From Haliotis cracherodii (lineage: Eukaryota), in the NCBI RefSeq assembly GCF_022045235.1, contig NW_027266297.1, positions 3,038,001 through 3,102,000 on the forward strand: a stretch of 64,000 nucleotides of DNA, in the 5' to 3' direction. The notes under the pieces were generated by a model, which had not been told where the DNA came from, did no database searches, and was given only the letters and a program-made list of their open reading frames with translations. Position 1 is the first letter of the stretch, and every line of letters starts with the position of its first letter. Both the position numbers and the translations under genes were made by a program. Shown here piece after piece: positions 1 through 14,670 of this stretch.

Positions 1-3
1 TAG

Positions 4-56
4 CTCTCATGGACAAGTTTGATCTCATCTGCCGCAGACTGCCACCACGTGGACAG
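4..56 (+). CDS. ROCO-like exon (LMDKFDLICRRLPPRGQ)
   Basis: tag|...cag|gtaatg, COR-type motif. Confidence 0.8.
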
Positions 57-3000
57 GTAATGCCAGTGACCCAATACTCCCTACGTCACCTAACTGGTCT
101 CATCTCATTCCAATTCCAGACTTTCCTTGACTGGGCTTCTCCACAACCTACGTCCGTGGACATCTCTCCAACACTAAGCTGACACACTGGGAAATAACTG
201 AGATACTGTTCAAAGTGGCACAAGCCCAGTTTACCCAAACTCTGGAATGTTTGTGAAAGCTGTCATACTGACATGTATTGCACATGCATTTGCTAAACCT
301 CTGGGTGCGGTTGTACAAAACAACCTCAATGCTACGACTATCGTAAGTCTATGTAAGGTATGGGAGTTACGATCAACTTAACGCTAAGATCGCTTTGTAC
401 AACAGCACCTAGGTGGGTTTTGGGTAGTTTTCCCAATACCTTCAATCTTGCACTTTCATTGTCTTTAATATCATTGTCCATTCTTTCACATTGTCGACAT
501 ACTCAGACCTATTGACACTTGTTGGCATATGTTTATGTTTGGCATCCCACATACCAAGATGACCCTGAAGATGCGGGTTAAGACGGGTCTTCAGCAACCC
601 ATGATTTTTGTAAAAGGCGACTAAGCTTGTTGTAAGAGGTGACTAACAGGATCAGATGGTCAGACTCGCTGACTTGCTTGATGTATTTTGTTGTATCGGA
701 ATTGCGTGAATCGATGCTCATGAAATCAGTCACTGGATTGTCTGGTCCATACTCGATTATTTACAGACAGCCGTCAAATAGCTGGAATATTGCTGAGTGC
801 AGTGTTAAACAACAAACAAACAAACAAACAATACATGACACCAAGTATTTTTTGAGAGGCTATATGTTGAGATGTTTGTTTCAGACTCACCGGGAGGAGA
901 CACACAGTTACTACGTCCCCATGCGGCTGGAGAAGTTGGATGATCAGCGCCACCTGTACACGCTCTCCGACAACGTGGCTGTGTTCTACCTTGACTTCAA
1001 CAACTTCCTCCCAGGTAGGTTCATCTTAGTGCTTAGTAAATCATGTGGCAAACATTGGAGAGATAATGTTTCTTTATATCAGCTTAGGGGGGTGTAAGTA
1101 TCAGACGTTTTTCCTCTTAACTTCTTCTGCAGTAGATGTTTGCAATGAAACCATGGTAACAGTCACATCACCAATGATGTGTTGTAGACGGCCTGTTCTA
1201 TCGGATCCTGACCCGAGCAATCAGGTGGTCCCAGGACAGTGGAGGCCGAGACCCCTATCTCTACAGTCGAATAGCCAAATTCTTTCTGGACGACTCTCAT
1301 GACTTTGTGTTGGAACTGTCACCTAGAGCGTACCACAGATTAAAGGTAGGTCTTGCTTAGCATACCACAGATGAAAGGTAGGTCTTACTTAGCATAACAC
1401 AGATGAAAGGTAGGTCTTGCTTAGCATACCATGGGTTAAGGTAGGTCTTACGTAGCATACCACGAGTTAAAGGTAGGTCTTGCTTAGCATACCACAGATG
1501 AAAGGTAGGTCTTGCTTAGCATACCATGGGTTAAAGGTAGGTCTTGCTTAGCATACCATGGGTTAAAGGTAGGTCTTGCTTAGCATACATTGGGTTAAAG
1601 GTAGGTCGTGCTTAGCATACCATGGGTTAAAGGTAGGTCTTGCTTAGCATACCTTGGGTTAAAGGTAGGTCTTGCTTAGCATACCACAGGTTAAGGGTAC
1701 TCTAGCTGTTCATGCCACATGGTGAACATCACAGAGTAGTAAATGGGAATATATATTCATTCAGAAGAGATGTTTCTAGTTTGAAGGTATGTACAGAGAT
1801 TAAAGTGCCATGATTTGTTTCACTTGTACATGTGGATGTGTTTCAGGTTGTCGTCGTGGGCATCTCCGACTCCATCTACACCAACCCTGGCTACAACCCC
1901 CTCTCCGCAGCCTGTGCCAAGGTTAATCTCCATTCACTGACATCTGTTTTACTATAAATTATTTAAAGTAAAGCAGTAGTTCATAAACAGACTAAGGATG
2001 CATTCGATAGGGCCGAACATGAGCAGATCTGGACAGTGAATCATGATTGTTTATTTCTTGTTTGTTTGTTTTTAACGCCTCACTCAGCAATATTCCAGCA
2101 ATATGATGGCGGACTGAAAAATAATCGAGTCTGGACCAGACAATCCAGTGATTGACATCATGAGCATCTATCCATGCAATTGGGATACCATGACATGCAC
2201 CAACAAACCTGACCCATTAGTCGCCTCTTATGACTAGCATAGTTACCTTTTATGGCAAGCATGGGTTGCTGAAGACCTATTCTACACTGGATCTTCACAG
2301 TTCGAATCATGATTATCTCCCTTTGATTACCAAAGTCATAATTGGTTGTGACTTTCTGCATCCAGGTGCGGAACTTCCTGGAGTCTACACTGACGGACCT
2401 GCGGCAACTGTGGATGAAGAGGATTGCCTGCAAGATGTGTCTGCGATGTACGTGTGACAAGGTGTGTGAGCGGCACGGCCTGGCCGGGTGTACCCAGGAG
2501 GCCTGCCTTCACTTCCTGGACCTGGACGAATGTCTCACCTCCAAGGTAGGATGTCACAGTTGTTTAATACCACACTCCGCTCTCTTCCAGCTGTATGACA
2601 GCACCTTGCAGTCAAGGCCTCGCCTCTGTGGTCTAGTGGTAGAGCGTCTGCCTGGAGAGCAGAAGATCGGGGTTCGATCCCTGGCCGCGTCATACCAAAA
2701 GACGTTAAAAGATGGTACTTCTTGTTACTCTGTCTGGCGCTTGGCATTAAGGGGCTAAAAAAGGGTTGGTTGGCTCGGAGTCAGTTTACCGTGTCTGAGT
2801 GGGGTATTCATGTTGAACTGCTGTTAGGTATGTCAGTGGGCTAGCACTGTAAATCAGTTCGGACAGTCACACGCACACACAGACACCTCTATATAAGTGC
2901 AATAATCTTAGACGCGACGTTAAACCCGATTTCACCTCACCTCACCCGCAGTCAAATCTGGACTCCAATCATCCATGCTGTCAGGGAACATGAAAAAAAC

Positions 3001-6000
3001 CAAGTCACCGAGATTCACCACTCAATCGACTTAGACGCCTCTTACAACCATCATGGGTTACTAAAGGAACAGTTTAACCCAGAATCCCTACAGAGTGTCT
3101 TGTCAGGGTGTCTGACCATCAATGTGAGATCCAAGTGTCTGACGCCGTCACCCAGGATTTTGGCTGAAACAATGTGTAAGGTAGCATGACATGCACTCAG
3201 ATCACCTGTGTCTCCCCACAAGGCATGATACAGTGTTGTAGACTCAGAAGAACTATAGCCAGCCCTGATGTCAGGTCCTCACCAGTGTATGTGAATGTAT
3301 CTGCGGACTGCATTAGAAGTCATCTATTGTTGTTCCAGATTGTTTGCTGTGAACATAGACGGGTGAAAACTGCTGATGTAAGGAAATGGTTTCCTCAACC
3401 CAAAATAGGTAATGGTCTGGAGCATTTCCCTTCCCAATGATAAAAAATTATGTGAGATGTTCAGATAAAGATTTAAAGAATTCTGGATAAGTTTCATGTG
3501 AATATTAATGCCTTTTCTTCAAATTGTTGCTCCTTGTGCAAGGGGATGAAACAAGTTGTCTTGAGTAGTACATATGCAACAAGTTGAAGAACACCCACAA
3601 TTGGAAGGCTGAGTGTTGCAACACCCACCAACCATGACAGCTAAAATCTTATGAAACAATTTAGTTTTTTTGAGAGGTATAGATTGCTGTTTGATTTGCT
3701 CTGTAGATATAAGGAAATATGTAACTATTCCATGCTTGCATTTTCCTGAGAAATACACCATAATCATGGGGCAAATTTCAACAATATCATCTTTTATAGG
3801 ACTTGCTGTCTGTAAGGTCAAATGATGCACTTGTTCTCCAGATATGCCTGAACCGATACTGCCTCGATTGACGTTGGAGATCACAGGGGGCAACATAGAG
3901 AAGAACGTCCCGAACCTGCCGTCCTGGATGAAGGGGGCGGCCAAGCTGCTCAACAGTGGGGCCGACGAACAGGACTGGGCGGCGCTGGCAAAACTCATGG
4001 GTAGGTAGGACTAGGTACCAGGGGTCAAGATGACTGTAAACTCATGGGTAGGTAGTACTAGGTACCAGGAGGTCAAGATGACCGTAAACTCATGGGTAGG
4101 TAGAACTAGGTACCGGGGATCAAGATGACTGTAAACTCATGGGTAGGTAGTACTAGGTACCAGGAGGTCAAGATGACTGTAAACTCATGGGTAGGTAGTA
4201 CTAGGTACCGGGGATCAAGATGACCGTAAACTCATGGGTAGGTAGTACTAGGTACCAGGAGGTCAAGATGACCGTAAACTCATGGGTAGGTAGTACTAGG
4301 TACCAGGGGTCAAGATGACTGTAAACTCATGGGTAGGTAGTACTGGGTACCAGGGATCAAGATGACTGTAAACTCATGGGTAGGTAGTAATAAGTACCAG
4401 GAGTCAAGATGACTGTAAACTCATGGGTAGGTAGTACTGGGTACCAGAGGTCAAGATGACCGTAAACTCATGGGTAGGTAGTACTAGGTACCAGGGGTCA
4501 AGATGACCGTAAACTCATGGGTAGGTAGTACTGGGTACCAGGGGTCAAGATGACCGTAAACTCATGGGTAGGTAGTACTGGGTACCAGAGGTCAAGATGA
4601 CCATAAACTCATGGGTAGGTAGTACTGGGTACCAGAGGTCAAGATGACCGTAAACTCATGGGTAGGTAGTACTAGGTACCAGAGGTCAAGATGACCGTAA
4701 ACTCATGGGTAGGTAGTACTAGGTACCAGAGGTCAAGATTACCGTAAACTCATGGGTAGGTAGTACTAGGTACCAGGGGTCAAGATGACCGTAAACTCAT
4801 GGGTAGGTAGTACTGGGTACCAGGGGTCAAGATGACCGTAAACTCATGGGTAGGTAGTACTAGGTACCAGGAGGTCAAGATGACCGTAAACTCATGGGTA
4901 GGTAGAACTAGGTACCGGGGATCAAGATGACAGTAAACTCATGGGTAGGTAGTACTAAGTACCAGGAGTCAAGATGACTGTAAACTCATGGGTAGGTAGG
5001 ACTAGGTACCAGAGGCCAAGATGACTGTAAACTCATGGGTAGGTAGTACTGGGTACCAGAGGTCAAGATGACCGTAAACTCATGGGTAGGTAGTACTAGG
5101 TACCAGAGGTCAAGATGACCGTAAACTCATGGGTAGGTAGTACTAGGTACCAGGGGTCAAGATGACCGTAAACTCACGGGTAGGTAGTACGAGGTACCAG
5201 CGGTCAAGATGACCGTAAACTCATGGGTAGGTAGTACTAGGTACCAGGAGGTCAAGATGACCGTAAACTCATGGGTAGGTAGTACTAGGTACCAGGGGTC
5301 AAGATGACCGTAAACTCATGGGAAGGTAGTACTGGGTACCAGGGGTCAAGATGACTGTAAACTCATGGGTAGGTAGTACTAAGTACCGGTAGTCAAGATG
5401 ACCGTAAACTCATGGGTAGGTAGTACTGGGTACCAGGAGTCAAGATGACTGTAAACTCATGGGTAGGTAGTACTAGGTACCAGGGGTCAAGATGACCGTA
5501 AACTCACGGGTAGGTAGTACGAGGTACCAGAGGTCAAGATGACTGTAAACTCATGGGTAGGTAGTACTAGGTACCAGGAGGTCAAGATGACCGTAAACTC
5601 ATGGGTAGGTAGTACTAGGTACCAGGGGTCAAGATGACCGTAAACTCATGGGTAGGTAGTACTGGGTACCAGGGGTCAAGATGACTGTAAACTCATGGGT
5701 AGGTAGTAATAAGTACCGGTAGTCAAGATGACCGTAAACTCATGGGTAGGTAGTACTGGGTACCAGGAGTCAAGATGACCGTAAACTCATGGGTAGGTAG
5801 TACTGGGTACCAGGAGTCAAGATGACCGTAAACTCACGGGTAGGTAGTACTAGGTACCAGGGGTCAAGATGACCGTAAACTCATGGGTAGGTACTAGGTA
5901 CCAGAGGTCAAGATGACCATAAACTCATGGGTAGGTAGTACTAGGTACCAGGGTCAAGATGACTGTAAACTCATGGGTAGGTAGTACTAGGTACCAGGGG

Positions 6001-9000
6001 TCAAGATGACCGTAAACTCATGGGTAGGTAGTACTGGGTACCAGGGGTCAAGATGACTGTAAACTCATGGGTAGGTAGTAATAAGTACCGGTAGTCAAGA
6101 TGACCGTAAACTCATGGGTAGGTAGTACTGGGTACCAGGAGTCAAGATGACCGTAAACTCATGGGTAGGTAGTACTGGGTACAAGGAGTCAAGATGACTG
6201 TAAACTCACGGGTAGGTAGTACTAGGTACAAGGAGTCAAGATGACCGTAAACTCATGGGTAGGTACTAGGTACCAGAGGTCAAGATGACCATAAACTCAT
6301 GGGTAGGTAGTACTAGGTACCAGGGTCAAGATGACCGTATACTCATGGGTAGGTAGTACTGGGTACCAGGAGTCAAGATGACCGTAAACTCATGGGTAGG
6401 TAGTACTGGGTACCAGGAGTCAAGATGACCGTAAACTCATGGGTAGGTAGTACTGGGTACCAGGAGTCAAGATGACCGTAAACTCATGGGTAGGTAGTAC
6501 TGGGTACCAGGAGTCAAGATGACCGTAAACTCACGGGTAGGTAGTACTAGGTACCAGGGGTCAAGATGACCGTAAACTCATGGGTAGGTACTAGGTACCA
6601 GAGGTCAAGATGACCATAAACTCATGGGTAGGTAGTACTAGGTACCAGGGTCAAGATGACTGTAAACTCATGGGTAGGTAGAACTAGGTACCAGGGGTCA
6701 AGATGACCGTAAACTCATGGGTAGGTACTAGGTACCAGAGGTCAAGATGACCATAAACTCATGGGTAGGTAGTACTAGGTACCAGGGTCAAGATGACTGT
6801 AAACTCATGGGTAGGTAGTACTAGGTACCAGGGGTCAAGATGACCGTAAACTCATGGGTAGGTAGTACTGGGTACCAGGGGTCAAGATGACTGTAAACTC
6901 ATGGGTAGGTAGTAATAAGTACCGGTAGTCAAGATGACCGTAAACTCATGGGTAGGTAGTACTGGGTACCAGGAGTCAAGATGACCGTAAACTCATGGGT
7001 AGGTAGTACTGGGTACCAGGGGTCAAGATGACTGTAAACTCACGGGTAGGTAGTACTAGGTACTAGGGGTCAAGATGACCGTAAACTCATGGGTAGGTAC
7101 TAGGTACCAGAGGTCAAGACGACTGTAAACTCATGGGTAGGTAGTACTAGGTACCAGGGTCAAGATGACCGTAAACTCATGGGTAGGTAGAACTAGGTAC
7201 CAGAGGTCAAGATGACCGTAAACTCATGGGTAGGTAGTACTAGGTACCAGAGGTCAAGATGACCGTATACTCATGGGTAGGTAGTACTGGGTACCAGAGG
7301 TCAAGATGACTGTAAACTCGTGGGTAGGTACCACATGGTCAAGTGGCCATTACATCAATGGCGATGGTGTAGGTTTAACAAAACACATGACAGTATACAA
7401 TGTTTACTCATTGTACTGCTGATGTGTGCCGAAAGGGAATTCAATTGTGAGGCTCTGTGATGCTTTTAGTGTCACTCGATGACTATCTTTAAAGGTTTTG
7501 GTTTTAGACTTCTGAAAACACCATCATGAGAGAAACTGCTATCTGTAAAATGGCCAAGTAAACCTTTATGGGAAACCTTTATTATATTTTTATGCAGATT
7601 TATCAAATTGCAGGAGGGAGGTATTATTTTCAATTCATTGCTGATTTAATATTTGACCAGGTTTGTTTGTTTGTTTGTTGTTGTTTAACGTCACACTCAG
7701 CAATATTCTAGTTATATGATGGCGGTCTGTAAATAACCGAGTCTGGACCAGACAATCCACTGATTGACATCATGAGCATCGATCCACGTAATTGGGATAC
7801 GATGGCATGCATCTAACCAAGTCAGCGAGCCTGACCACCCGATCCCATTAGTATCCTCTTACGACAAGCATAGTAGCCTTTTACAGCAAACATGAGTTGC
7901 TGAAGACCCATTCTAACCCCAGATCTTGACAAGGTTGGCCAGATGCATATTTGAGTTATTTCACTGGAATGTACTTTGTTTAAGAATCATCAAATTACTT
8001 GGGATTTTTTGCATTAAATGAATCACTCATAAAATCCCAAACATTCAATGCCAGATTCAACAAGTTAACAACTATTCATTATCAAAACACTTCTAGGAAA
8101 TCAGTTTTACAAAACAGAAAAATATCTAAATCTTTTGAAAAATGATATGGTGAGGGTGATATTTTCTACAGGTATATTATGTTAATTATTTAAAAAAAAA
8201 TTGTCAGTATTTAATTCCACAGATGTTTCCTAGAAAATGATTCAGGTAGTCTGTGTCCACATTAGTTGCAGACATTAGGCTTGTATTCAGAGTATTTGTC
8301 TTGTAAAAGTTAGAAGGAATCATCTAGATTTTAGAAATACTTACCAATGGAAATGAGTGATAGTGTGAATTCTATTGCTAGATGCACGTGTTGACTACCA
8401 TGAACCTAAGTTCACTCTATACCGTAGAGGCACATAGAGTATCACCCACCAAAGTCAACAGCTGAGCATTGCAATGTACAGTTAAACACTGTTGTGTCGA
8501 ATGTTGATGTGTCAAACTTACACTTGTTTCAAAGTAAAAGCTTGGTCCTACCGTATTCCTTCTTTAGTCATCATTTCCGTTTGTGTCGAACCTTGGATAA
8601 CTTGAAGTATTTACGTAGGCCTCTTCAACTTCGACAGCGGTGTTGGACGGAAGGTACATTAATCTTGAACGCAAAGTTAAACCCCATTTAACCTCACCTC
8701 AACCTTTATGTACATTTGAGCATTTGACCTTGGAAGTGGTGAATCATACAATATATCAGCAAGTTTGACTTTCAATAATTGGTTAGACCACTCGCATGTA
8801 CGATCATCCGAGTTGCGCAGTGACCATGGAATTAGAAAATCGTTAAGATCTGCCTGTTTGTCCTGCAGGTTACAAACAGGCTCGGATTGACCAGATCAAC
8901 GAGGATCTGAACCCAGCCCTGGCCCTGCTGACCGACTGGGTGCTGACCAGCGGGAACAGCTCCCTCTCGGTCGACCTCATGATGGTGTTCCTGGAACAGA

Positions 9001-12000
9001 TCAATCGAGACGACATTGTGGACGTCATCCAGAAGGCCAAGGGTTCGTGTCGCTTTGCATGATTCAGTCATTACTCTCACATCCACTGCTTACCTAGAAA
9101 TTCAATAACCACAAACCAGATTCATGTGGAAGTGCACCATTAGGCTTGACAACTTGGTATGCAACGATGCCAATGTACTGTCACTGCAGCGCATATGTGA
9201 AACATGCCTTTGATATTGTCCCCAATCCCATGTCGGCAGCCTCAAGCAGCGCCAGATTTGTTCACACTTCACATTTTCAGACTACCAGTCTATCGGGTTA
9301 ATACGTAGTGGAGGATGCAGTATATATACTACTCAAAAGAAGAACTTTAAGGATCACCCAGTTCTTTCATATTGGTAATGTTAATCTGTCATGGCATGAG
9401 AGATTAACTATTGTAATATGAAAGAATCCAGGTGATCCTTAACTTCTTTTGAGTAGTATATACTGACGGAAATAAATAAGGGAACACTTAGTTACAGACA
9501 CTGTAAAATGACATGCTGTCATGTGTTCCCAAATACATGTTGGAAACATTGCACACATACACATCTCACCATTTGATTCTGATGTGTTGAATTTGTATGC
9601 ATGCTATTTCAAAAGTACTGACAGTAAAGTTTATTCCCCTGTATTTTTTCAATGGTCCCTTAATGGTTTCCATCAGTATGAGTGGCACATTTAGATTTTT
9701 TTATCCTGCTCTGGTTGTTACATACTCTTTTTAGTCTTACTTCATTTTTGAAACCTCTCGTGAAACCATTTGTCTTTTGAAGCTGAGCATGCAAGTTAAA
9801 TATCTTAAATGGTTGCTAAGACACCTATATACTCACCAGCAAAAGAAACACAAATACCATAAATGTTAGCTCATATATGAAGAATTGCTCTTATTCAACA
9901 GATATTAGTTTGGTTTGATGCACAAATAAACCTACTGGTATGTTGTGTGAAGTGAATGTATGCATAACTTATGACGTCATAGATCCATGACTTGAGATGC
10001 ACTATTTGTCTCATACAGGATTAGCATGTAAAGTTTAGAAAACCTTTTTGCAGAATATAATAAGAGTAAAGACATTCTATGGTAACACTTGACTGATTGT
10101 TTTGTCATTAAGTGGTACACATTGGAAACATCTCTTCTTATACTTACTTCTCTCTATGTTTCTATGGTTGCATTTCTGTTGGCGGTGAGTATGTATAGTA
10201 TATATTGAAATAAATAGTATTGAACATTGAAGGCAAGCTACAGTGCCTCTTGTCTGTATGTTTGTAACAGAGTTACAAAGGCAAGCTACAGTGCCTCTTG
10301 TCTGTATGTTTGTAACAGAGAGTTACAAAGGCAAGCTTCAGTGCCTCTTGTCTGTATGTTTGTAACAGAGAGTGAGTCAGACCTGCCGCAGATCTTCCTG
10401 AGCTACCAGTGGGACTCCCAGGATGACGTCCAGAGTCTCCGGGCACGCCTGGAGAGGGCGGGTTTCACCTGCTGGATGGACATTGGTCAGATGGGTGGCG
10501 GGGATCAGCTCAACCTCAAGATCGATGAGGGCATTCGGAACTGTGTGGTGAGTTGGTAAAGATGATGTCAGAGAAGATAGAATGTGAGCTGGGCTTACAC
10601 AACAGTGAGACAACACAAGGGTGCTGTAAGCGTGTATATTTGTTGTTGTTAAAGCCACACTCAGCAATATTCCAGCTATATGACGGCAGTCTGGACCAGA
10701 CAATCTGACAGATTAATATCATGAGCATCGATCCACGCAACTGGGATACAATGACATGCATCAACCAAGTCAGCAAGCCTGACCACCCGATCCCGTTAGT
10801 CGCCTTTACGGCAAGAATGGGTTGCTGAAGACCTATTCTAACCCGGATCTTCACGGGTAGTGCTGTAAGCAGTATTTAAGTTACATTACTGCATGTGAGT
10901 TTGATGCGGGAGGAAACCCCCAAGTGATGCAGGTACTTCACCCCAAATGTCATCATTTTTTATGAATGATTACAACACTGAGCCATAATTATGGTAATAC
11001 TTACGAATCTTCTACCTCTAAAACATCATTGACAAATTCCTGTAATTTGCCTGCAATCTCACTAAACTAAACAATTCTTATGAAATCTCTACCTCTATCT
11101 ATCTCTGCTATAAATCTTGTATTTTGGCTTCAATCACACTAACTAAAACTTTCAGATTTTCTGCACAAGTCCTCTTCAATGTCAACTATACAACATCAGT
11201 TGTCCGGCAATAGCACTCAATTACCCCAAGGTATTCTAGTGTGTGAAGGCGACAGAAACCTCACTTCTTCCCTGTGTATGTACTGCTCCTCCAGCAGTCA
11301 CACTATTCTTGTCCATTTCAGTAAAGAGGCTTATTACTCTAAAGTAGTAGTCTTATTGGCTGCTTATAGTACATGAGTATTAAGTAAGTAATAATGGAAG
11401 ATATACTCCCACTACCTCCTCGTCGAGATCTTCTACATCAACCTAGGTCAGACATCTTCTACGAAAATCTTTCCAGCCCAAATCTCACTGCCTGGAAGTT
11501 TTCTCGCAAAAGATGCAAGCCTCCTGATTCTCTGATTCTGCCTCAGAAACTGTGGCTAAATCATGGAGGAGAGCTATCTCCATCTCCCCATCTCCCTCTA
11601 CCTCCCCCCCCCCTCTATCAGCAATGAAATGGGAGTTCTAAAGAAGGTATCACACATTGACATTTTATTCCACTGCATGATTTCAAATAATTCAATGAAT
11701 GTAAACTCTTTGGGATTTGAAGCTGATTTATAATGAGGGAATCACAGGAAGGTAATTGCTGTCAACTATACAGGGAGTGTTCTAGAGGCAGAACCCACCT
11801 TTCCCTCCGGTATATTCTGGCAATAATGTAATAGAGGTAGAGGATTTGTAAGAATTATCAAACAATAGTTGTTATTGTTAATGATTCTAAGAATACTACC
11901 TCTATTACATCAGAAGTACTCCCTCCCACCTCCAAGATCATCTGTCTCCAGTTGATTGATGAGTGGAAAGATGTGAGGTTTCTCCTGCCTTCATATACGA

Positions 12001-13342
12001 GAGTGCCATGGGCTAAATGAGTGCTATTGCGGGACAACTGATTGTTGTGTAGTTGACAGTGAAGAGAACTTTTGTTGAAAATCGGAAAGTTTAGTTTAGT
12101 GTGATTGACACCAAAATACAGGAATTTGGCAGTGATGTAAAAGTTATAGTATTCTTACAATTAGTAACAATGATATTGTTTGATGTTTGTACACTACATT
12201 TGTACACTCTGCCCGGGGTGGCTCAGTCGTCTAATGCGCGATTCATTGTGCAGAGTTACGTCCCTTGGGCACGCCAGAAACCCATGATTGTGGGTTCAAA
12301 TCCTGGTTCGCCCCGATTATGTTTCTTGGTTTGTCAGCACCATACCCGTGCTCATTGGTTTCACCCACGTGGTCTGAGACCTGCACCACTTCGGGCTCTC
12401 CTCCAACATTAAGCTGACACGCCGCGATATTACTGGAATACTGTTAAAAGCGGCATAAAACCCAACTCACTCACTCACACAATGTACATTCTGCCCACAG
12501 CTGTTCGTCTCCTGCATCACGCCCAAGTACGTGGTGTCCCACCACTGTAACCGCGAACTGGCCTTGGCAGACATCTTGAAGAAACCCATCATCCCTGTCA
12601 TGTTTGAGTCCGTCGTCTGGCCGCCACCTGGGGGCATGTCTGTCATCCTCTCTCAGCTCGTCTATATCAATATGAAAGGTAATTGAATGTTCAAAATGAC
12701 ATTTTGTGTCTCAAGAAGTTTCCAAGCCACAAGTGACATACTTGTGTTGCTCTAAATTTAAATTTGTATTGACTAAGTTAGTTACCACCTGTTATCATGT
12801 AGAACAGTGCATAATACATGAAAAATGGGTGTTGAATTCTTACTAAATAGAAAATTGTTGAAGACAGTTATCAATAATTCCAAGACCATGTTCCTCCAAC
12901 TTTAATCAGTGACGCTGTGATATAACTGAAAGCAGCACTAAACAACTCACTCGATAACATACCCCCATCCCTTGCAGGTGTCGGAGGTCACGGTGGCAGC
13001 GGGGTCCATGCTGACCTCCAGGACAAGCATAATGAAATCATCAACCGGATCCTCCTGTACACCATGCCTGCCGTCCAGCCTTGCATCGACTCCTCCGTCA
13101 CAGTTACCGACATCAGCAAGCAGCAGGACCTGGGCAGCGAGAGCCTGTATGACACCAGTCTCAGTTCTCTCACAGAACCAGACATCCCCCTGCTCCAAGA
13201 GGTGTACCACGCACCCCCCAGCCCCCGTCGCAACCCCGTCGTCGCGCCGCAGCCAGAACCTGCTCAGCGAGCAGCAGCAGCAGCAACAAGGAACGTGGAG
13301 CAGGTTCATGTGACGAAGTGTGCAGTATGTGTAATACTGTAG
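4..13342 (+). CDS. ROCO-like protein, 3' part (COR - death domain - TIR_2 - CaaX), 11 exons, 5' end outside window
   Basis: Phase-consistent GT-AG exons: 4-56, 885-1014, 1188-1345, 1847-1921, 2366-2545, 3339-3408, 3842-4000, 8869-9042, 10369-10547, 12501-12678, 12978-13342. COR-like motifs LMDKFDLIC, YYVP and FLPDGLFYRIL; death domain DWAALAKLMG...PALALLTDW...LEQINRDDIV; TIR IFLSYQWDSQ...CWMDIGQMGGGD...SHHCNRE...PIIPV; ends CVIL*. Confidence 0.88.
301..412. mobile_element. Small MITE
   Basis: Imperfect TIR ctgggtgcggttgtacaaa / tttgtacaacagcacctag. Confidence 0.6.
563..830 (+). mobile_element. SINE-like family A copy
   Basis: Matches 7 other copies in the window (core cagcaacccatg...aaaggcgactaa; tail gctggaatattgctgagtg...(aaac)n). 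Confidence 0.8.
885..1014 (+). CDS. ROCO-like exon (THREETHSYYVPMRL...FNNFLP)
   Basis: tttcag|...ccag|gtaggt, phase 0 to 1. Confidence 0.88.
1188..1345 (+). CDS. ROCO-like exon (DGLFYRILTRAIRWSQ...AYHRLK)
   Basis: ttgtag|...aaag|gtaggt, phase 1 to 0. Confidence 0.88.
1331..1697 (+). repeat. 32-bp minisatellite, about 11 copies, spanning an exon/intron junction
   Basis: Unit taccacagattaaag|gtaggtcttgcttagca. Confidence 0.95.
1847..1921 (+). CDS. ROCO-like exon (VVVVGISD...AACAK)
   Basis: tttcag|...aag|gttaat, 75 nt, phase 0 to 0. Confidence 0.82.
2058..2300 (-). mobile_element. SINE-like family A copy
   Basis: Reverse-complement match to 563-830. Confidence 0.8.
2366..2545 (+). CDS. ROCO-like exon, Cys/His-rich (VRNFLES...DECLTSK)
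   Basis: tccag|...aag|gtagga, 180 nt. Confidence 0.88.
2616..2947 (+). mobile_element. tRNA-derived SINE with Meta-like central domain
   Basis: A box tggtctagtgg, B box ggttcgatccc, core gtcataccaaaagacgttaaaagatggtac, (cctca)n tail, TSD gcagtcaa. Confidence 0.8.
3339..3408 (+). CDS. ROCO-like exon (IVCCEHRR...KWFPQPKI)
   Basis: ttccag|...tag|gtaatg, phase 0 to 1. Confidence 0.85.
3842..4000 (+). CDS. ROCO-like exon, start of death domain (…AAKLLNSGADEQDWAALAKLM)
   Basis: ctccag|...atgg|gtaggt, phase 1 to 1. Confidence 0.88.
3991..7331 (+). repeat. 47-bp minisatellite, about 70 copies, each containing the exon end and 5' splice site
   Basis: Unit aaactcatgg|gtaggtagtactaggtaccaggggtcaagatgaccgt. 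Confidence 0.97.
7662..7932 (-). mobile_element. SINE-like family A copy
   Basis: Reverse-complement match to family A. Confidence 0.8.
8869..9042 (+). CDS. ROCO-like exon, death domain (GYKQARIDQ...DIVDVIQKAK)
   Basis: ctgcag|...aagg|gttcgt, phase 1 to 1. Confidence 0.88.
9329..9456. mobile_element. Tc1/mariner-type MITE
   Basis: TIR ctactcaaaagaag..ttaaggatcacc / ggtgatccttaacttcttttgagtag, TA flanks. Confidence 0.75.
9463..9676. mobile_element. Tc1/mariner-type MITE
   Basis: TIR ctgacggaaa..taaggga / tcccttaatggtttccatcag, TA flanks. Confidence 0.65.
9832..10189. mobile_element. Tc1/mariner-type MITE
   Basis: TIR ctcaccagcaaaagaaa / tttctgttggcggtgag, TA flanks. Confidence 0.6.
10230..10372 (+). 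repeat. 48-50 bp triplication containing the 3' splice site of the TIR exon
   Basis: cttgtctgtatgtttgtaacagag three times (AG ending at 10270, 10318, 10368). Confidence 0.9.
10369..10547 (+). CDS. ROCO-like exon, TIR N-half (IFLSYQWDSQ...IDEGIRNCV)
   Basis: taacag|...gtg|gtgagt, TIR box 1 motif. Confidence 0.9.
10639..10857 (-). mobile_element. SINE-like family A copy
   Basis: Family match; flanking direct repeat gtgctgtaagc. Confidence 0.82.
10990..12125 (+). mobile_element. Internally deleted DIRS1-like retrotransposon remnant
   Basis: Long inverted repeats (about 11115-11228 vs 12010-12122); 11832-11859 complementary to 10992-11019; decayed peptide LPLPPRRDLLHQP...LTAWKFS resembling the end of the DIRS pol ORF. 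Confidence 0.6.
12211..12478 (+). mobile_element. tRNA-derived SINE, possibly V-domain-like
   Basis: A box tggctcagtcg, B box ggttcaaatcc, shared tail, (actc)n end, diverged TSD tgtaca(c/t)tctgccc. Confidence 0.72.
12501..12678 (+). CDS. ROCO-like exon, TIR C-half (LFVSCITPKYVVSHHCNRELALA...VYINMK)
   Basis: ccacag|...aaag|gtaatt, phase 0 to 1. Confidence 0.9.
12978..13342 (+). CDS. ROCO-like terminal coding exon (GVGGHGGSG...TKCAVCVIL*)
   Basis: ttgcag| acceptor, open to TAG at 13340-13342. Confidence 0.88.
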
Positions 13343-13837
13343 CCCTGAAGGACTTTACTATACAGGGCTCCAAGTGTGCAGTATGTGGCATATTGTGTAG
13401 CCCAGAGGAACTGTCACAGCTTCGAAGGACTTCACATAGTTTGTCTTTCACTCATGTCAACAAACTCAAAATCCAGTAAATTGCGACTGGAAGTGTTTTG
13501 TTTGTGAATACAGATTACTGTGTATTTGTGACATGGTAACATTGTTAGTGAGGATGGTATGTACTCTTTCACATGATCAAGTTGAGGACCAGGATTCCAG
13601 GATTGCCAGTATTCATTTCAAGTGCTATTCCACCCTTATACTGAATTTTAGGAAGAATGATCTTTTATTCATGCTTTGGAGCTGGCTGACTGAATTTGGT
13701 GTTTAGCTCAAAACCAAAATGAAACAGCTCATGATGAAATCACTGTAGGTGTCCAATGAATGATCATTATCAGTGATTGGCAAGTGGATTAATAGGACTC
13801 CTTATCATATGGACTGGACTCAATGCATTCAGTTTAC

Positions 13838-14670
13838 CATCAAGGTCACCATTGCTACTGGAACATGGATACTCCTGTGGGCATTGGTACCATCAAGGTC
13901 ATCATTGCTCCTGGAACATGAATACTCCTGTGGACATTGGTACCATCAAGGTCATCATTGCTACTGGAACATGGATGCTCCTGTGGACATTGGTACCATC
14001 AAGGTCATCAATGCTACTGGAACATGGATACTCCTGTGGACATTGGTACCATCAAGGTCATCATTGCTACTGGAACATGGATACTCCTGTGGACATTGGT
14101 ACCATAAAGGTCATCATTGCTACTTGAACATGGATACTCCTGTGGACATTGGTACCTTCAAGGTCATCATTGCTACTGGAACATGGATACTCCTGTGGAT
14201 ATTGGTACCATCAAGGTCATTGCTACTGGAACATGGATACTCCTGTGGATATTGGTACCATCAAGGTCATCATTGCTACTGGAACATGGATACTCCTGTG
14301 GACATTGGTACCATCAAGGTCATTGCTACTGGAACATGGATACTCCTGTGGACATTGGTACCATCAAGGTCATCATTGCTACTGGAACATGGATACTCCC
14401 GTGGACATTGGTACCATCAAGGTCATTGCTACTGGAACATGGATACTCCTGTGGATATTGGTACCATCAAGGTCATCATTGCTACTGGAACATGGATACT
14501 CCTGTGGACATTGGTACCATCAAGGTCATTGCTACTGGAACATGGATACTCCTGTGGATATTGGTACCATCAAGGTCATCATTGCTACTGGAACATGGAT
14601 ACTCCTGTGGACATTGGTTCCATAAAGATCTTCAGGGCTACTGGAATGTGAATACTTCTGTAGACATTGT
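13838..14670 (+). repeat. 53/50-bp minisatellite, about 16 copies, in probable 3' UTR
   Basis: Unit catcaaggtc(atc)attgctactggaacatggatactcctgtggacattggtac. Confidence 0.95.

What the first reader, a model, noticed from the sequence alone, without database searches (positions are those of the whole stretch)
4..13342. ROCO-type protein ending in a MyD88-like death-TIR module plus a CaaX lipid anchor
Seen: the spliced ORF runs COR-like region, Cys/His-rich segment, death domain, TIR, a Ser/Pro-rich tail, then KCAVCVIL*. Known: DD followed by TIR is the MyD88 arrangement; CaaL is a geranylgeranyltransferase-I signal, and a nearby upstream Cys is often palmitoylated. Inference: a membrane-tethered, probably Roc-GTPase-gated innate immune or cell-death signalling protein combining switch, adaptor and anchor in one chain. 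I do not recognise this architecture as a characterised gene family.
Basis: partly seen in the sequence, partly recalled or inferred. Interest (0 to 1): 0.75.

Follow-up and report, generated by a model that had tools for sequence, protein, structure and literature searches.

The report
Lipid-anchored ROCO death-TIR signalling gene
This is a real, expressed abalone gene from an old invertebrate family, catalogued but never studied, that joins a GTPase switch to death and TIR signalling domains and ends in a strictly conserved lipid-anchor signal.

Summary
Window 1-13342 carries the last 11 of 22 exons of one gene. All ten acceptors and ten donors are AG/GT and the reading phase runs unbroken to KCAVCVIL-stop. 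Single exons hit Pfam COR-A, Death and TIR_2. Spliced contigs in 4 of 4 public runs join the last four exons as predicted.

The gene is single copy here. It is 94% identical to Haliotis rufescens LOC124147603, an "uncharacterized protein". The same NHR-Roc-COR-Death-TIR order occurs in molluscs, annelids, nemerteans, rotifers, flatworms, arthropods, echinoderms, hemichordates and amphioxus.

Of 80 homologues, 67 end in Cys-x(1-2)-Cys-a-a-X, and X is Leu in 62. The linker before the motif is unconserved. A second Death-TIR-TIR family also ends in a CaaX box.

The module resembles MyD88 only in domain order. The death domain is nearest NRADD/p75NTR, and the TIR is nearest bacterial and SARM1 TIRs.

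The architecture is already in print for Aplysia. I found no report of the anchor. The scan's notes hold no earlier report of this family.

The parts
1..56 (+). 3' part of the exon that encodes the end of COR-A (...LLALMDKFDLICRRLPPRGQ). The exon starts 108 nt upstream of the window, at L001:753.
   Evidence: AG acceptor and GT donor read. tblastn of orthologues P0018 and P0167 covers it. Pfam COR-A in P0167 runs to residue 718.
640..830 (.). Dispersed SINE-like repeat inside the intron. It is not coding sequence of this gene.
   Evidence: Own-genome DNA search gave 5205 first-look candidates. Of 40 scored, 42 matches came back, at 82-90% identity apart from the window's own locus, on many contigs.
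885..1014 (+). Exon, start of the COR-B-like region (THREETHSYYVPMRL...FNNFLP).
   Evidence: AG/GT, phase 0 to 1. tblastn P0167. The orthologue model region aligns to COR of solved Roco and LRRK2 structures.
1188..1345 (+). Exon, COR-B-like region (GLFYRILTRAIRWSQ...).
   Evidence: AG/GT, phase 1 to 0. 100% identical to P0167 residues 750-803.
1327..1699 (.). 32-bp x 11.7 tandem array that begins inside the exon's last 19 nt and repeats its donor site.
   Evidence: Tandem Repeats Finder. Sequence read.
1847..1921 (+). Exon, COR-B-like region (VVVVGISDSIYTNPGYNPLSAACAK).
   Evidence: AG/GT, phase 0 to 0. tblastn P0167 95.7%.
2366..2545 (+). Exon with the conserved Cys/His cluster (C-x-C, C, H, C, C, H, C).
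   Evidence: AG/GT. These Cys and His columns are kept in 35-39 of 39 orthologues. In the Lottia model this stretch lies within the range aligned to RocCOR of C. tepidum Roco (model 38-777).
3339..3408 (+). Exon (IVCCEHRRVKTADVRKWFPQPKI), end of the Cys/His segment.
   Evidence: AG/GT, phase 0 to 1. tblastn P0018 and P0167.
3842..4000 (+). Exon, N-terminal half of the death domain.
   Evidence: AG/GT, phase 1 to 1. tblastn P0018. No Pfam hit on this piece alone. Death covers it in the orthologue P0167, residues 953-1019.
3991..7330 (.). 47-bp x 71 minisatellite in the death-domain intron. It starts inside the exon's last 10 nt and repeats the donor.
   Evidence: sequence. Also noted by the first stage as s1-832079.
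8869..9042 (+). Exon, C-terminal half of the death domain.
   Evidence: Pfam Death 1.1e-5. AG/GT. Spliced contigs start or continue here (table 8).
10230..10373 (.). 50-bp x 2.9 tandem array that repeats the acceptor of the first TIR exon.
10369..10547 (+). Exon, TIR N-terminal half, with the near-invariant CWMDIGQMGGGD stretch.
   Evidence: Pfam TIR_2 1.6e-10. AG/GT. Contigs join 9041/9042 to 10368/10371. Ten of the 12 motif columns are invariant, 39 of 39.
12501..12678 (+). Exon, TIR C-terminal half, with the invariant Glu (NRELALA) and WPPPGG.
   Evidence: Pfam TIR_2 1.4e-6. AG/GT. Contigs join 10546 to 12500. Glu kept in 39 of 39.
12978..13342 (+). Last coding exon: GGHGG, the last TIR helix, a disordered linker, then the conserved end and the stop codon.
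   Evidence: AG acceptor, phase 1. Contigs join 12676 to 12976 and run on to 13401. Single copy in the genome.
13319..13339 (+). C-A-V-C-V-I-L. The CaaX box CVIL sits at 13328-13339, with a second Cys three residues upstream at 13319-13321.
   Evidence: Sequence. In 39 aligned orthologues, the CaaX Cys is kept in 39, the upstream Cys in 37 and the final Leu in 38. Of 80 homologues, 67 end this way.
13343..13800 (+). 3' untranslated region (at least this far).
   Evidence: Contigs cover 13103-13705, 13389-13800 and 12976-13401 (table 8).

Best explanation
This is the 3' half of a single-copy abalone gene of 22 exons and about 43.6 kb (genome C34:3007787-3051342). It is the orthologue of Haliotis rufescens LOC124147603.

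The protein has about 1265 residues. Its parts run in this order:
- a Neuralized-homology (NHR) domain;
- a Roc GTPase with a long disordered insert;
- COR-A;
- COR-B, ending in a conserved Cys/His cluster;
- a death domain;
- a TIR_2-type TIR domain;
- a disordered linker of about 80-110 residues;
- the end Cys-x-x-Cys-Val-Ile-Leu.

Shown here: the gene structure, its transcription and splicing, the domains, and the deep conservation of the architecture and of the terminal motif.

Inferred mechanism. Geranylgeranyltransferase-I prenylates the CaaX cysteine. The cysteine just upstream is probably palmitoylated. The protein therefore hangs from a membrane on a flexible linker. The Roc-COR unit works as a nucleotide-dependent dimerising switch, as in other ROCO proteins. 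The NHR domain is the likely partner- or ligand-binding input. The death and TIR domains are the output, seeding homotypic death-domain and TIR assemblies at the membrane for an innate-immune, stress or cell-death signal.
For: Gene model.
- AG/GT at all in-window junctions, with a consistent phase.
- Exon-by-exon tblastn of P0018 and P0167 maps 22 exons from L007:9787 to window 13339.

Expression.
- All 4 runs laid hold spliced contigs.
- X8 record 18 (4009 nt) and X3 record 13 join 8868-9041 | 10368-10546 | 12500-12676 | 12976-13401.

Domains on single exons.
- Roc 25.3 bits, COR-A 53.5 bits, Neuralized 1e-20.
- Death and TIR_2 (twice).
- P-loop exon.

Domains in the 94%-identical orthologue P0167, all above their cut-offs: Neuralized 133.8, Roc 58.5, COR-A 74.1, Death 33.5 and TIR_2 77.7 bits.

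Structure.
- Lottia orthologue model: pLDDT 71.9, tail 1043-1129 below 50.
- LRRK2: Z 27.7, 474 residues aligned.
- C. tepidum RocCOR 3dpu: Z 21.2, 455 of 485 residues, model range 38-777.
- COR-only 3dpt: TM 0.73 normalised by target length.

Switch residues in 39 orthologues: P-loop Gly and Lys 39 of 39; the Asp and Gly of DxxG 39 of 39.

Anchor.
- 67 of 80 homologues end C-x(1-2)-C-a-a-X, with X = L in 62.
- 4 of 4 further rotifer and millipede members also do.
- Majority-residue conservation is 0.21 in the linker and 0.69 in the last 8 residues.
- 12 of 13 members of a paralogous Death-TIR-TIR family end in a basic stretch plus CaaX.

Single copy.
Against: - No experiment shows lipidation, membrane location, GTP binding or any signalling role. 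No prenylation predictor was available here.
- The Roc exon alone is just under Pfam's cut-off (25.3 against 27). COR-B has no Pfam hit even at E<=1.
- The guanine-specificity Asp of the G4 motif (GTHR-D) is Asn in 22 of 39 orthologues and Asp in only 9, abalone included. Nucleotide handling may therefore be unusual.
- A single-copy, slowly evolving gene is not what expanded invertebrate immune receptors look like. It fits a conserved housekeeping, neuronal or developmental signal just as well.
- The only expression clue in print is one transcript labelled 'neuralized pats1', listed as down 758.9-fold in clam QPX lesions (PMC4769524, passage). That is an isoform-level figure, named by annotation.
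- The kind of the runs laid is a guess ('RNA?').
Confidence: 0.65

Rival explanations
1. The TIR domain is an enzyme rather than an adaptor. On activation it cleaves NAD+ as SARM1 and bacterial TIRs do, so the protein is a membrane-bound executioner and not a MyD88-type scaffold.
For: - The family's TIR profile finds NAD-cleaving TIRs first: 7uwg 9.4e-8, AbTIR 8g83 1.5e-7, Cat1 1.6e-7, PdTIR 2.3e-6, SARM1 3.5e-5.
- TLR TIRs come only at 0.04-0.6, and no MyD88 TIR appears at E<=1.
- The Glu that aligns with the 'EL' glutamate of AbTIR, Cat1 and PdTIR is invariant, 39 of 39. That this Glu is catalytic is recalled, not tested.
- Foldseek lists SARM1 and C. elegans TIR-1 as the first non-ROCO matches.
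Against: - The Trp four residues before that Glu, present in AbTIR and Cat1 in the printed alignments, is H, L, S or N in this family.
- Many non-enzymatic TIRs also keep the Glu (recalled).
- Hydra TRR2, a receptor-type TIR, scores as well as SARM1 (3.5e-5).
Confidence: 0.3
2. The protein is not mainly an immune component. It is a conserved developmental or neuronal membrane signalling protein that uses an NHR domain, as in Neuralized, and a p75NTR/NRADD-like death domain.
For: - NHR is closest to Drosophila Neuralized NHR1 (2yue and 4kg0, 6e-48 with the family profile).
- The death domain is closest to NRADD (2.1e-11) and p75NTR (1.5e-10).
- The gene is single copy here.
- It is strongly conserved: majority-residue fraction 0.75 in the TIR and 0.65 in the death domain across 39 species. 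That is unlike fast-evolving expanded immune families.
Against: - TIR and death domains together are known almost only from immune and cell-death signalling.
- Roc-COR units fused to TIR effectors are described as conflict systems in bacteria (PMC8195603, passage).
- No expression-site data were obtained.
Confidence: 0.3
3. The terminal Cys-x-x-Cys-a-a-L is conserved for another reason, such as metal binding, a disulphide or a docking motif. The protein is not prenylated.
For: - Two cysteines three residues apart could bind a metal.
- A Val three residues before the first Cys is also conserved, in 36 of 39.
- No lipidation data exist.
Against: - The motif is always at the very end.
- The last residue is Leu in 62 of 67, and the residue before it is I, L, V or M. 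That is the GGTase-I rule (recalled).
- It follows a disordered linker with pLDDT under 50.
- In oysters the upstream Cys shifts by one residue, which breaks a fixed CxxC spacing (6 CxCaaX cases).
- A paralogous family has a single Cys plus a Lys-rich stretch, the classic polybasic-CaaX form.
Confidence: 0.08
4. It is a true MyD88 family member, a paralogue, that simply gained extra N-terminal domains.
For: - The domain order is death then TIR.
- PMC9334734 lists the Aplysia counterpart (LOC101861518) among 'MyD88-like' proteins (passage).
- The MyD88 death domain is detectable at 1.7e-4.
Against: - The death domain scores six to seven orders of magnitude better against NRADD and p75NTR.
- No MyD88 TIR appears among 48 PDB hits at E<=1.
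- Pfam assigns TIR_2 (PF13676), not TIR (PF01582), to the orthologue.
Confidence: 0.07

Closest known systems
NHR-Roc-COR-Death-TIR proteins of other invertebrates: RefSeq 'uncharacterized protein', e.g. Haliotis rufescens LOC124147603; 'neuralized PATS1' in Saccoglossus kowalevskii; Aplysia LOC101861518 in PMC9334734
   Same: Same domain order and length (about 1240-1310 aa). 94% identity to the H. rufescens protein over 1103 aligned residues. Same terminal CxxCaaL.
   Different: Nothing of substance: this is the orthologue in another abalone genome. No function has been tested for any member in the papers I could search.
MyD88
   Same: A death domain directly followed by a TIR domain. Both proteins are expected to work by homotypic assembly.
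   Different: MyD88 is about 300 aa, soluble, with no GTPase, NHR or lipid anchor (recalled). Here the death domain is nearer NRADD/p75NTR. The TIR is TIR_2-type and nearer bacterial and SARM1 TIRs.
DAPK1 (a ROCO protein with a death domain)
   Same: Roc-COR followed by a death domain and then a low-complexity tail (the DAPK1 layout is recalled).
   Different: No kinase or ankyrin repeats here (no such Pfam hits). This protein also has an NHR domain at the N-terminus, a TIR after the death domain, and a CaaX end.
LRRK2, LRRK1 and bacterial Roco (C. tepidum, M. barkeri)
   Same: The Roc-COR-A-COR-B fold: Z 27.7 with LRRK2 and Z 21.2 with 3dpu over the whole tandem. P-loop and DxxG motifs are kept.
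   Different: No LRR, kinase or WD40. The Roc domain carries a large disordered insert. COR-B carries a conserved Cys/His cluster. The G4 Asp is often Asn.
SARM1 and bacterial NAD-cleaving TIRs (AbTIR, Cat1)
   Same: Best sequence matches for the TIR. An invariant Glu sits at the aligned catalytic position.
   Different: The Trp before the Glu is missing. There are no ARM or SAM domains. Enzyme activity is untested.
Small GTPases with a CaaL box plus nearby palmitoyl-Cys (RhoB, Rap2 type; recalled)
   Same: A C-terminal Cys-aliphatic-aliphatic-Leu with a second Cys 2-3 residues upstream, behind a flexible stretch.
   Different: Here the anchor ends a 1265-residue multidomain protein. Its GTPase domain is about 800 residues away from the anchor.
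Death-TIR-TIR-polybasic-CaaX proteins (e.g. Branchiostoma floridae LOC118413458, Crassostrea virginica LOC111130167)
   Same: The Death-TIR module is 36-40% identical. 12 of 13 end in CaaX.
   Different: No NHR or Roc-COR. Two TIR domains. The anchor is a Lys-rich stretch plus one Cys instead of two Cys. TIR look-alikes form tandem clusters in this genome.
Sea-anemone 'Novel Gene 3' (PMC5094078)
   Same: [quoted passage not shown]
   Different: It has a protein kinase and SH3 instead of NHR. I did not have its sequence, so neither the relationship nor its C-terminus was tested.

Membership tests
ROCO proteins | Roc (Ras-of-complex) GTPase domain with nucleotide-binding motifs | tested here: met
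   P-loop exon L005:2211-2390 (GKDRVGKTS). DFAGQ exon hits Pfam Roc at 25.3 bits, against a cut-off of 27. Orthologue P0167 scores Roc 58.5 bits. P-loop Gly and Lys, and the DxxG Asp and Gly, are kept in 39 of 39.
ROCO proteins | COR-A directly after Roc | tested here: met
   Exon L004:8562-8768 scores COR-A 53.5 bits against a cut-off of 35.3. P0167 scores COR-A 74.1 bits over residues 557-718.
ROCO proteins | COR-B | tested here: met
   No Pfam COR-B hit at E<=1. The Lottia orthologue model aligns over the whole RocCOR tandem of 3dpu (455 of 485 residues, Z 21.2, model 38-777). It also aligns to the COR-only entry 3dpt (TM 0.73 normalised by target length). The test was made on an orthologue model, not on the window's own spliced product.
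MyD88 family | Death domain followed by TIR | tested here: met
   Exon order Death (3842-4000, 8869-9042) then TIR_2 (10369-10547, 12501-12678).
MyD88 family | Death and TIR domains that group with MyD88's | tested here: not met
   Death: NRADD 2.1e-11 and p75NTR 1.5e-10, against MyD88 1.7e-4. TIR: none of the 48 PDB matches at E<=1 is a MyD88 TIR. No phylogeny was made.
MyD88 family | Small adaptor without other domains | tested here: not met
   The orthologue has 1265 aa with Neuralized, Roc and COR-A besides Death and TIR_2.
CaaX-prenylated proteins (GGTase-I substrates) | Cys-aliphatic-aliphatic-Leu as the last four residues | tested here: met
   CVIL then TAG at 13328-13342. Transcript-like contigs keep it.
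CaaX-prenylated proteins (GGTase-I substrates) | Motif under selection in relatives | tested here: met
   67 of 80 homologues have it, with X = L in 62. The 13 exceptions are 6 truncated models, 4 other architectures and 3 other ends. The linker is not conserved, at 0.21.
CaaX-prenylated proteins (GGTase-I substrates) | Covalent isoprenoid on the Cys; membrane binding | not testable with these tools
   This needs labelling, mass spectrometry or localisation experiments.
NHR-Roc-COR-Death-TIR orthogroup (H. rufescens LOC124147603 and relatives) | Same five Pfam domains in the same order, with high identity | tested here: met
   94.2% identity over 1103 residues in 18 exon matches. Domains are found exon by exon and in P0167.
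NAD-cleaving TIR domains (SARM1/AbTIR type) | Glu at the catalytic position | tested here: met
   It aligns with the 'EL' Glu of AbTIR, Cat1 and PdTIR and is invariant, 39 of 39. That this Glu is the catalytic one is recalled.
NAD-cleaving TIR domains (SARM1/AbTIR type) | Trp four residues before the Glu | tested here: not met
   The column holds H 11, L 9, S 6 and N 5 (four most frequent of 39). AbTIR and Cat1 show W there. The role of that Trp is recalled.
NAD-cleaving TIR domains (SARM1/AbTIR type) | NADase activity | not testable with these tools
   An enzyme assay is needed.
DAPK1-type ROCO | Kinase and ankyrin repeats before Roc-COR-Death | tested here: not met
   No Pkinase or Ank hit in P0167 at E<=1. 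The Roc-COR-Death order is shared.

The most novel reading that the evidence does not exclude
Lipid anchoring may be an ancestral, built-in part of a bilaterian death-TIR signalling module. Two separate families carry it:
- this NHR-ROCO-death-TIR family, with a double-Cys CaaL end;
- a death-TIR-TIR family, with a polybasic CaaX end.

On this reading the abalone gene stands for a third kind of TIR signalling platform, beside receptor-MyD88 and SARM1. It would be a membrane-resident, GTPase-gated sensor and executor in one chain. It appears in most invertebrate phyla sampled, and in no vertebrate, insect or nematode among the hits I saw. Its TIR may act as an NAD-consuming enzyme.
Probability: 0.3. 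Interest if true: 0.75.

Novelty: new member of a known kind. Interest (0 to 1): 0.55.

Why it matters
The gene itself is ordinary in one sense. It is the abalone copy of a family already listed in RefSeq for dozens of invertebrates. Its domain set has been drawn once, for Aplysia.

The family matters for three reasons. It is single copy in this genome. It is spread from rotifers and flatworms to echinoderms and amphioxus. No member has been studied.

It puts four things in one chain: an input domain, a ROCO switch of the kind mutated in Parkinson's disease, two classic immune and cell-death assembly domains, and a membrane anchor.

The terminal CxxCaaL is near-universal, and there is a parallel CaaX in a sister death-TIR family. 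I could not find either point in print. Both give a simple, testable handle, namely a Cys-to-Ser mutant with a localisation read-out. That could open work on how ROCO switches drive downstream assemblies and on TIR signalling outside vertebrates.

Tried and rejected
Pfam on single exons gave little for half the pieces. Five of the ten in-window ORF pieces gave no hit and two gave chance-level hits only. The death-domain N-half, the COR-B-like exons and the tail are therefore supported only through orthologues.

A PDB search with the second TIR exon alone (59 aa) gave only noise: Mediator and C5a receptor at E 0.3-1.4.

Pfam COR-B was not found, even at E<=1, in the full orthologue. The COR-B claim rests on a predicted structure of the Lottia orthologue.

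Gerdol et al. 2017 (Dev Comp Immunol) defined the 'ecTIR-DC' families and may list this one. The paper is not held, so I only recall it. The supplementary tables of PMC9334734, PMC5094078, PMC8662601 and PMC6321704 may name this family or its members. They were closed and I did not see them.

The search of earlier findings by words found nothing on this family.

The look-up of sequencing runs found no run on record as RNA. All kinds are guesses.

In one search, the table of joints (table 5) shows only 15 of 223 joints, and none of the three exon joints is among them. The splicing evidence comes from the table of contig pieces (table 8).

Readings considered and rejected:
- Pseudogene or chance ORFs: rejected by the splice sites, the phase, the 94% orthologue and the spliced contigs.
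- Retrocopy as the source of the spliced contigs: the death-domain exon, the COR-A exon and the tail each match one place only in the genome, the intron-bearing locus.
- Chance CaaX: rejected by its conservation.
- MyD88 orthologue: rejected.
- Neuralized exons belonging to a separate upstream gene: rejected because 7 of the 8 long homologues scanned start with this domain, and so does P0167.

Absence from vertebrates, insects, nematodes and cnidarians is only 'not among the 77 and 81 hits listed'. Each of those searches scored only 8000 candidates.

Full report
WHERE AND WHAT.

The window is G000:C34:3038001-3102000 of a 1.18-Gb assembly in 80 contigs. I fetched 40 kb upstream as L004-L007.

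I read the junctions base by base and then checked them by script. The ten exons from 885 to 13342 all have AG before them. All but the last have GT after them. The running phase closes exactly on the TAG at 13340-13342. The exon that straddles the window start ends at 56, with a GT donor in phase 0.

Where a full-length sequence was needed I used database orthologues.

DOMAINS, EXON BY EXON.

- Window 8847-9059: Pfam Death (1.1e-5).
- Window 10224-10556: TIR_2 (1.6e-10, profile 1-51).
- Window 12459-12683: TIR_2 (1.4e-6, profile 52-109).
- Upstream, L004:8352-8798: COR-A (3.2e-14, 53.5 bits against a cut-off of 35.3).
- L005:8542-8967: Roc (25.3 bits, just under the cut-off of 27). It carries DFAGQ.
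- L004:2440-2649 carries FIVGTHRD.
- L005:2211-2390 carries the P-loop LMLVGKDRVGKTS.
- L007:9724-9999: Neuralized (1e-20).

Five of the ten in-window pieces scanned gave no Pfam hit, and two gave chance-level hits.

THE FAMILY.

I ran phmmer with the COR-A exon against 1.84 billion representatives. It gave 255 hits at E<=1e-3.

I scanned eight long hits. Seven have Neuralized-Roc-COR-A-Death-TIR_2. The eighth is a Macro-Roc-COR protein. The named ones come from a freshwater mussel, octopuses, a snail, amphioxus, a nemertean, a starfish and a centipede. All are 'uncharacterized' or carry an automatic kinase label.

A word search with the full-length homologue P0018 listed 77 proteins at E<=1e-20. 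These add many more molluscs, annelids, hemichordates (one named 'neuralized PATS1'), echinoderms, a priapulid, a flatworm, a rotifer, ticks, mites and a barnacle. A second search, with the Death-TIR-tail part of P0167, added bdelloid rotifers and a millipede.

The best match to the window's exons is Haliotis rufescens LOC124147603 isoform X2 (P0167). It is 94.2% identical over 1103 residues in 18 exon matches. tblastn of P0018 and P0167 places 22 exons from L007:9787, the start ATG, to window 13339. P0167 passes the Pfam cut-offs for Neuralized, Roc, COR-A, Death and TIR_2.

In this genome the COR-A exon, the second death-domain exon and the tail exon each match one place only. The first TIR exon has 22 further matches at 62% identity or less, on contigs C1, C25 and C10.

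EXPRESSION.

The one run search found 23 holders. None is on record as RNA.

I laid the contigs of X1, X2, X3 and X8 (three organism codes, three studies) on window 8400-13800. In all 4 runs a contig skips the introns (table 8):

- X8 record 18 (4009 nt) and X3 record 13 (974 nt) lie on 8868-9041, 10368-10546, 12500-12676 and 12976-13401, without a break in the record.
- X2 record 7 covers the first three pieces.
- X1 record 2 covers the last three.

The ends agree with my junctions to within 1-3 letters. X8 record 18 has 7 other letters in its last piece. All seven are listed in table 3, and none falls in 13316-13342.

These joints are not among the 15 of 223 printed in table 5.

The 3053 nt of X8 record 18 that lie upstream of 8868 are about what the 963 upstream codons plus a 5' leader need. 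I did not lay that part.

ROC-COR FOLD AND THE CYS/HIS SEGMENT.

I modelled the Lottia orthologue P0190 (1129 aa) by AlphaFold with a 39-sequence alignment. Mean pLDDT is 71.9 and pTM is 0.61. The last 87 residues are under pLDDT 50.

- Foldseek puts LRRK1, C. tepidum Roco and LRRK2 on top (1.4e-20 to 1e-13). It matches the COR-only entry 3dpt at TM 0.73 normalised by target length.
- VIA-align gives LRRK2 Z 27.7 (rmsd 4.0, 474 aligned).
- VIA-align gives 3dpu Z 21.2 (455 of 485 residues, model 38-777).

The aligned range ends after the strands that carry the conserved cysteines and histidines. C-x-C is kept in 39 of 39, and four more Cys or His positions in 35 of 39. That COR-B is the dimer interface in bacterial Roco is recalled.

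IS IT MyD88-LIKE?

Only in domain order.

With the family profile (A1) against PDB sequences:
- The death domain matches NRADD (2.1e-11) and p75NTR (1.5e-10) far better than MyD88 (1.7e-4).
- NHR matches Drosophila Neuralized NHR1 (6e-48).
- Roc-COR matches archaeal and bacterial Roco proteins and LRRK2.

With a TIR-only profile (A2), the order of hits is:
- 7uwg, 9.4e-8
- AbTIR, 1.5e-7
- Cat1, 1.6e-7
- PdTIR, 2.3e-6
- SARM1 and Hydra TRR2, 3.5e-5
- a TIR-STING fusion, 0.03
- TLRs, 0.04-0.6
- no MyD88 TIR among the 48 hits at E<=1

The printed alignments put the family's invariant Glu under the 'EL' Glu of AbTIR, Cat1 and PdTIR. The Trp four residues earlier in AbTIR and Cat1 is not kept in the family. 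The TIR could be an enzyme or a scaffold. I lean to scaffold, but weakly.

THE ANCHOR.

The protein ends K-C-A-V-C-V-I-L.

I examined 80 homologues: the 77 plus P0077, P0159 and P0151. Their ends are:
- 60 end CxxCaaX.
- 6 end CxCaaX (oysters and pearl oyster).
- 1 ends CxxCLIN.

The last residue is L in 62, I in 4 and N in 1.

The 13 without the motif are:
- six models that stop within or just after the TIR (P0163, P0180, P0203, P0219, P0028, P0089);
- four proteins of other architecture (P0221, P0224, P0226, P0227);
- two S. purpuratus isoforms and a barnacle model with other ends.

Four further members (three rotifers and a millipede) also end CxxCaaX.

In the 39-sequence alignment, the linker between the TIR and the end has a majority-residue fraction of 0.21, against 0.69 for the last eight residues. 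The CaaX Cys is kept in 39 of 39, the upstream Cys in 37 of 39, and the Leu in 38 of 39.

Two rules are established knowledge that I recall and did not test here. CaaX with X = Leu directs geranylgeranylation. A nearby Cys is often palmitoylated.

A SECOND FAMILY WITH THE SAME HABIT.

The Death-TIR search also found proteins of 900-1470 aa with Death plus two TIR_2 domains and no Roc-COR. They are 36-40% identical over the module. Twelve of 13 end in a Lys/Arg/Ser-rich stretch plus CaaX, for example ...KKKSKTCSIL. The exception is a Haliotis rubra model. This makes a lipid anchor look like a property of the module rather than a quirk of one gene.

LITERATURE.

- PMC9334734 (passages). The Fig. 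6 legend lists NHR, ROC, COR, Death and TIR for Aplysia proteins. The text counts one 'MyD88-like' protein with ROCO domains (LOC101861518). So the architecture is in print, from sequence analysis only.
- PMC5094078 (passages). It describes anemone genes with Roc/COR plus TIR, one with kinase, Roc/COR, Death and TIR.
- PMC8195603 (passages). It notes Neuralized repeats among SPRY-like immune domains, and bacterial Roc-COR proteins with TIR and other effectors.
- PMC6321704 and PMC8662601 (passages). They speak of conserved invertebrate TIR families without vertebrate counterparts, citing Gerdol et al. 2017, which is not held.
- PMC4769524 (passage). It lists a 'neuralized pats1' transcript as strongly down in clam QPX lesions.

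Searches that combined ROCO, TIR, death domain, prenylation or CAAX found no paper on a CaaX end in such proteins (listings only).

VERDICT.

- The protein starts with an NHR domain.
- The death-TIR pair is not MyD88-derived by any test I could run.
- The family is catalogued, and its architecture has been published once.

What seems new is the strict conservation of the double-Cys CaaL end, and its parallel in a sister family. Function is inferred, not shown.

Noticed in passing
L005:4755-5258, 5368-6933, 8892-8988; L004:2595-4783, 7542-8161, 8842-9894; window 1327-1699, 3991-7330, 10230-10373: Nine tandem arrays in this one gene start or end at a splice junction, affecting 8 of its 21 introns. 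Several repeat the donor or acceptor itself together with up to 22 codons of the exon. Examples are at least 14 copies of the last 18 codons plus donor of the GTHRD exon, and 71 copies of the death-domain donor. The three junctions that I could check in contigs use the exon-proximal site. I have no explanation, and I did not test whether it is a habit of the whole genome.
   Followed up: partly
window 13306-13321 and 13372-13387: The DNA for the last codons (…AAGTGTGCAGTATGTG…) occurs again about 66 nt further on, after the stop. There it would read KCAVCGILCS in another frame position. This is a small local duplication of the gene's end inside the 3' UTR.
   Followed up: no
G000:C1:3451306-3785884, C1:51423942-51446555, C25:926456-930446: The first TIR exon has 22 look-alike matches at up to 62% identity. 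They come in tandem clusters, often two about 1.4 kb apart. This fits an expanded Death-TIR-TIR family, whose members in other species end in polybasic CaaX boxes. I did not fetch these abalone loci.
   Followed up: partly
P0224 (Amphiura filiformis, 1894 aa): A brittle-star protein lists RIG-I CARD, DEAD/helicase and RIG-I C-terminal domains together with Roc, COR-A, COR-B and Death (precomputed Pfam). That would be an RNA-sensor helicase fused to a ROCO switch and a death domain.
   Followed up: no
P0028, P0180, P0203, P0219; window 10547/10548: Four gene models from a snail, a limpet, a sea slug and a tick stop at or near the boundary after the first TIR exon. In the window, reading through that donor adds three codons and a stop. 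A short isoform without the second TIR half and the anchor is possible, but these may simply be annotation artefacts.
   Followed up: no
L004:2440-2649 (GTHRD); alignment A3: The residue at the position of the guanine-specificity Asp in the G4 motif is Asn in 22, Asp in 9, Ser in 2 and Lys in 2 of 39 orthologues (four most frequent). This is unusual for a GTPase. Its meaning for nucleotide choice is unknown.
   Followed up: partly
L005:7234-7497 and 7702-7923: ORFs inside the 6-kb Roc intron include a weak phage-integrase-type match (0.0024, below the cut-off). This may be the remains of a tyrosine-recombinase mobile element.
   Followed up: no
window 13835-14669: A 53/103-bp tandem array (16 or 8 copies) lies just downstream of the part of the 3' UTR that contigs cover. 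It gives long spurious ORFs in all three + frames.
   Followed up: no
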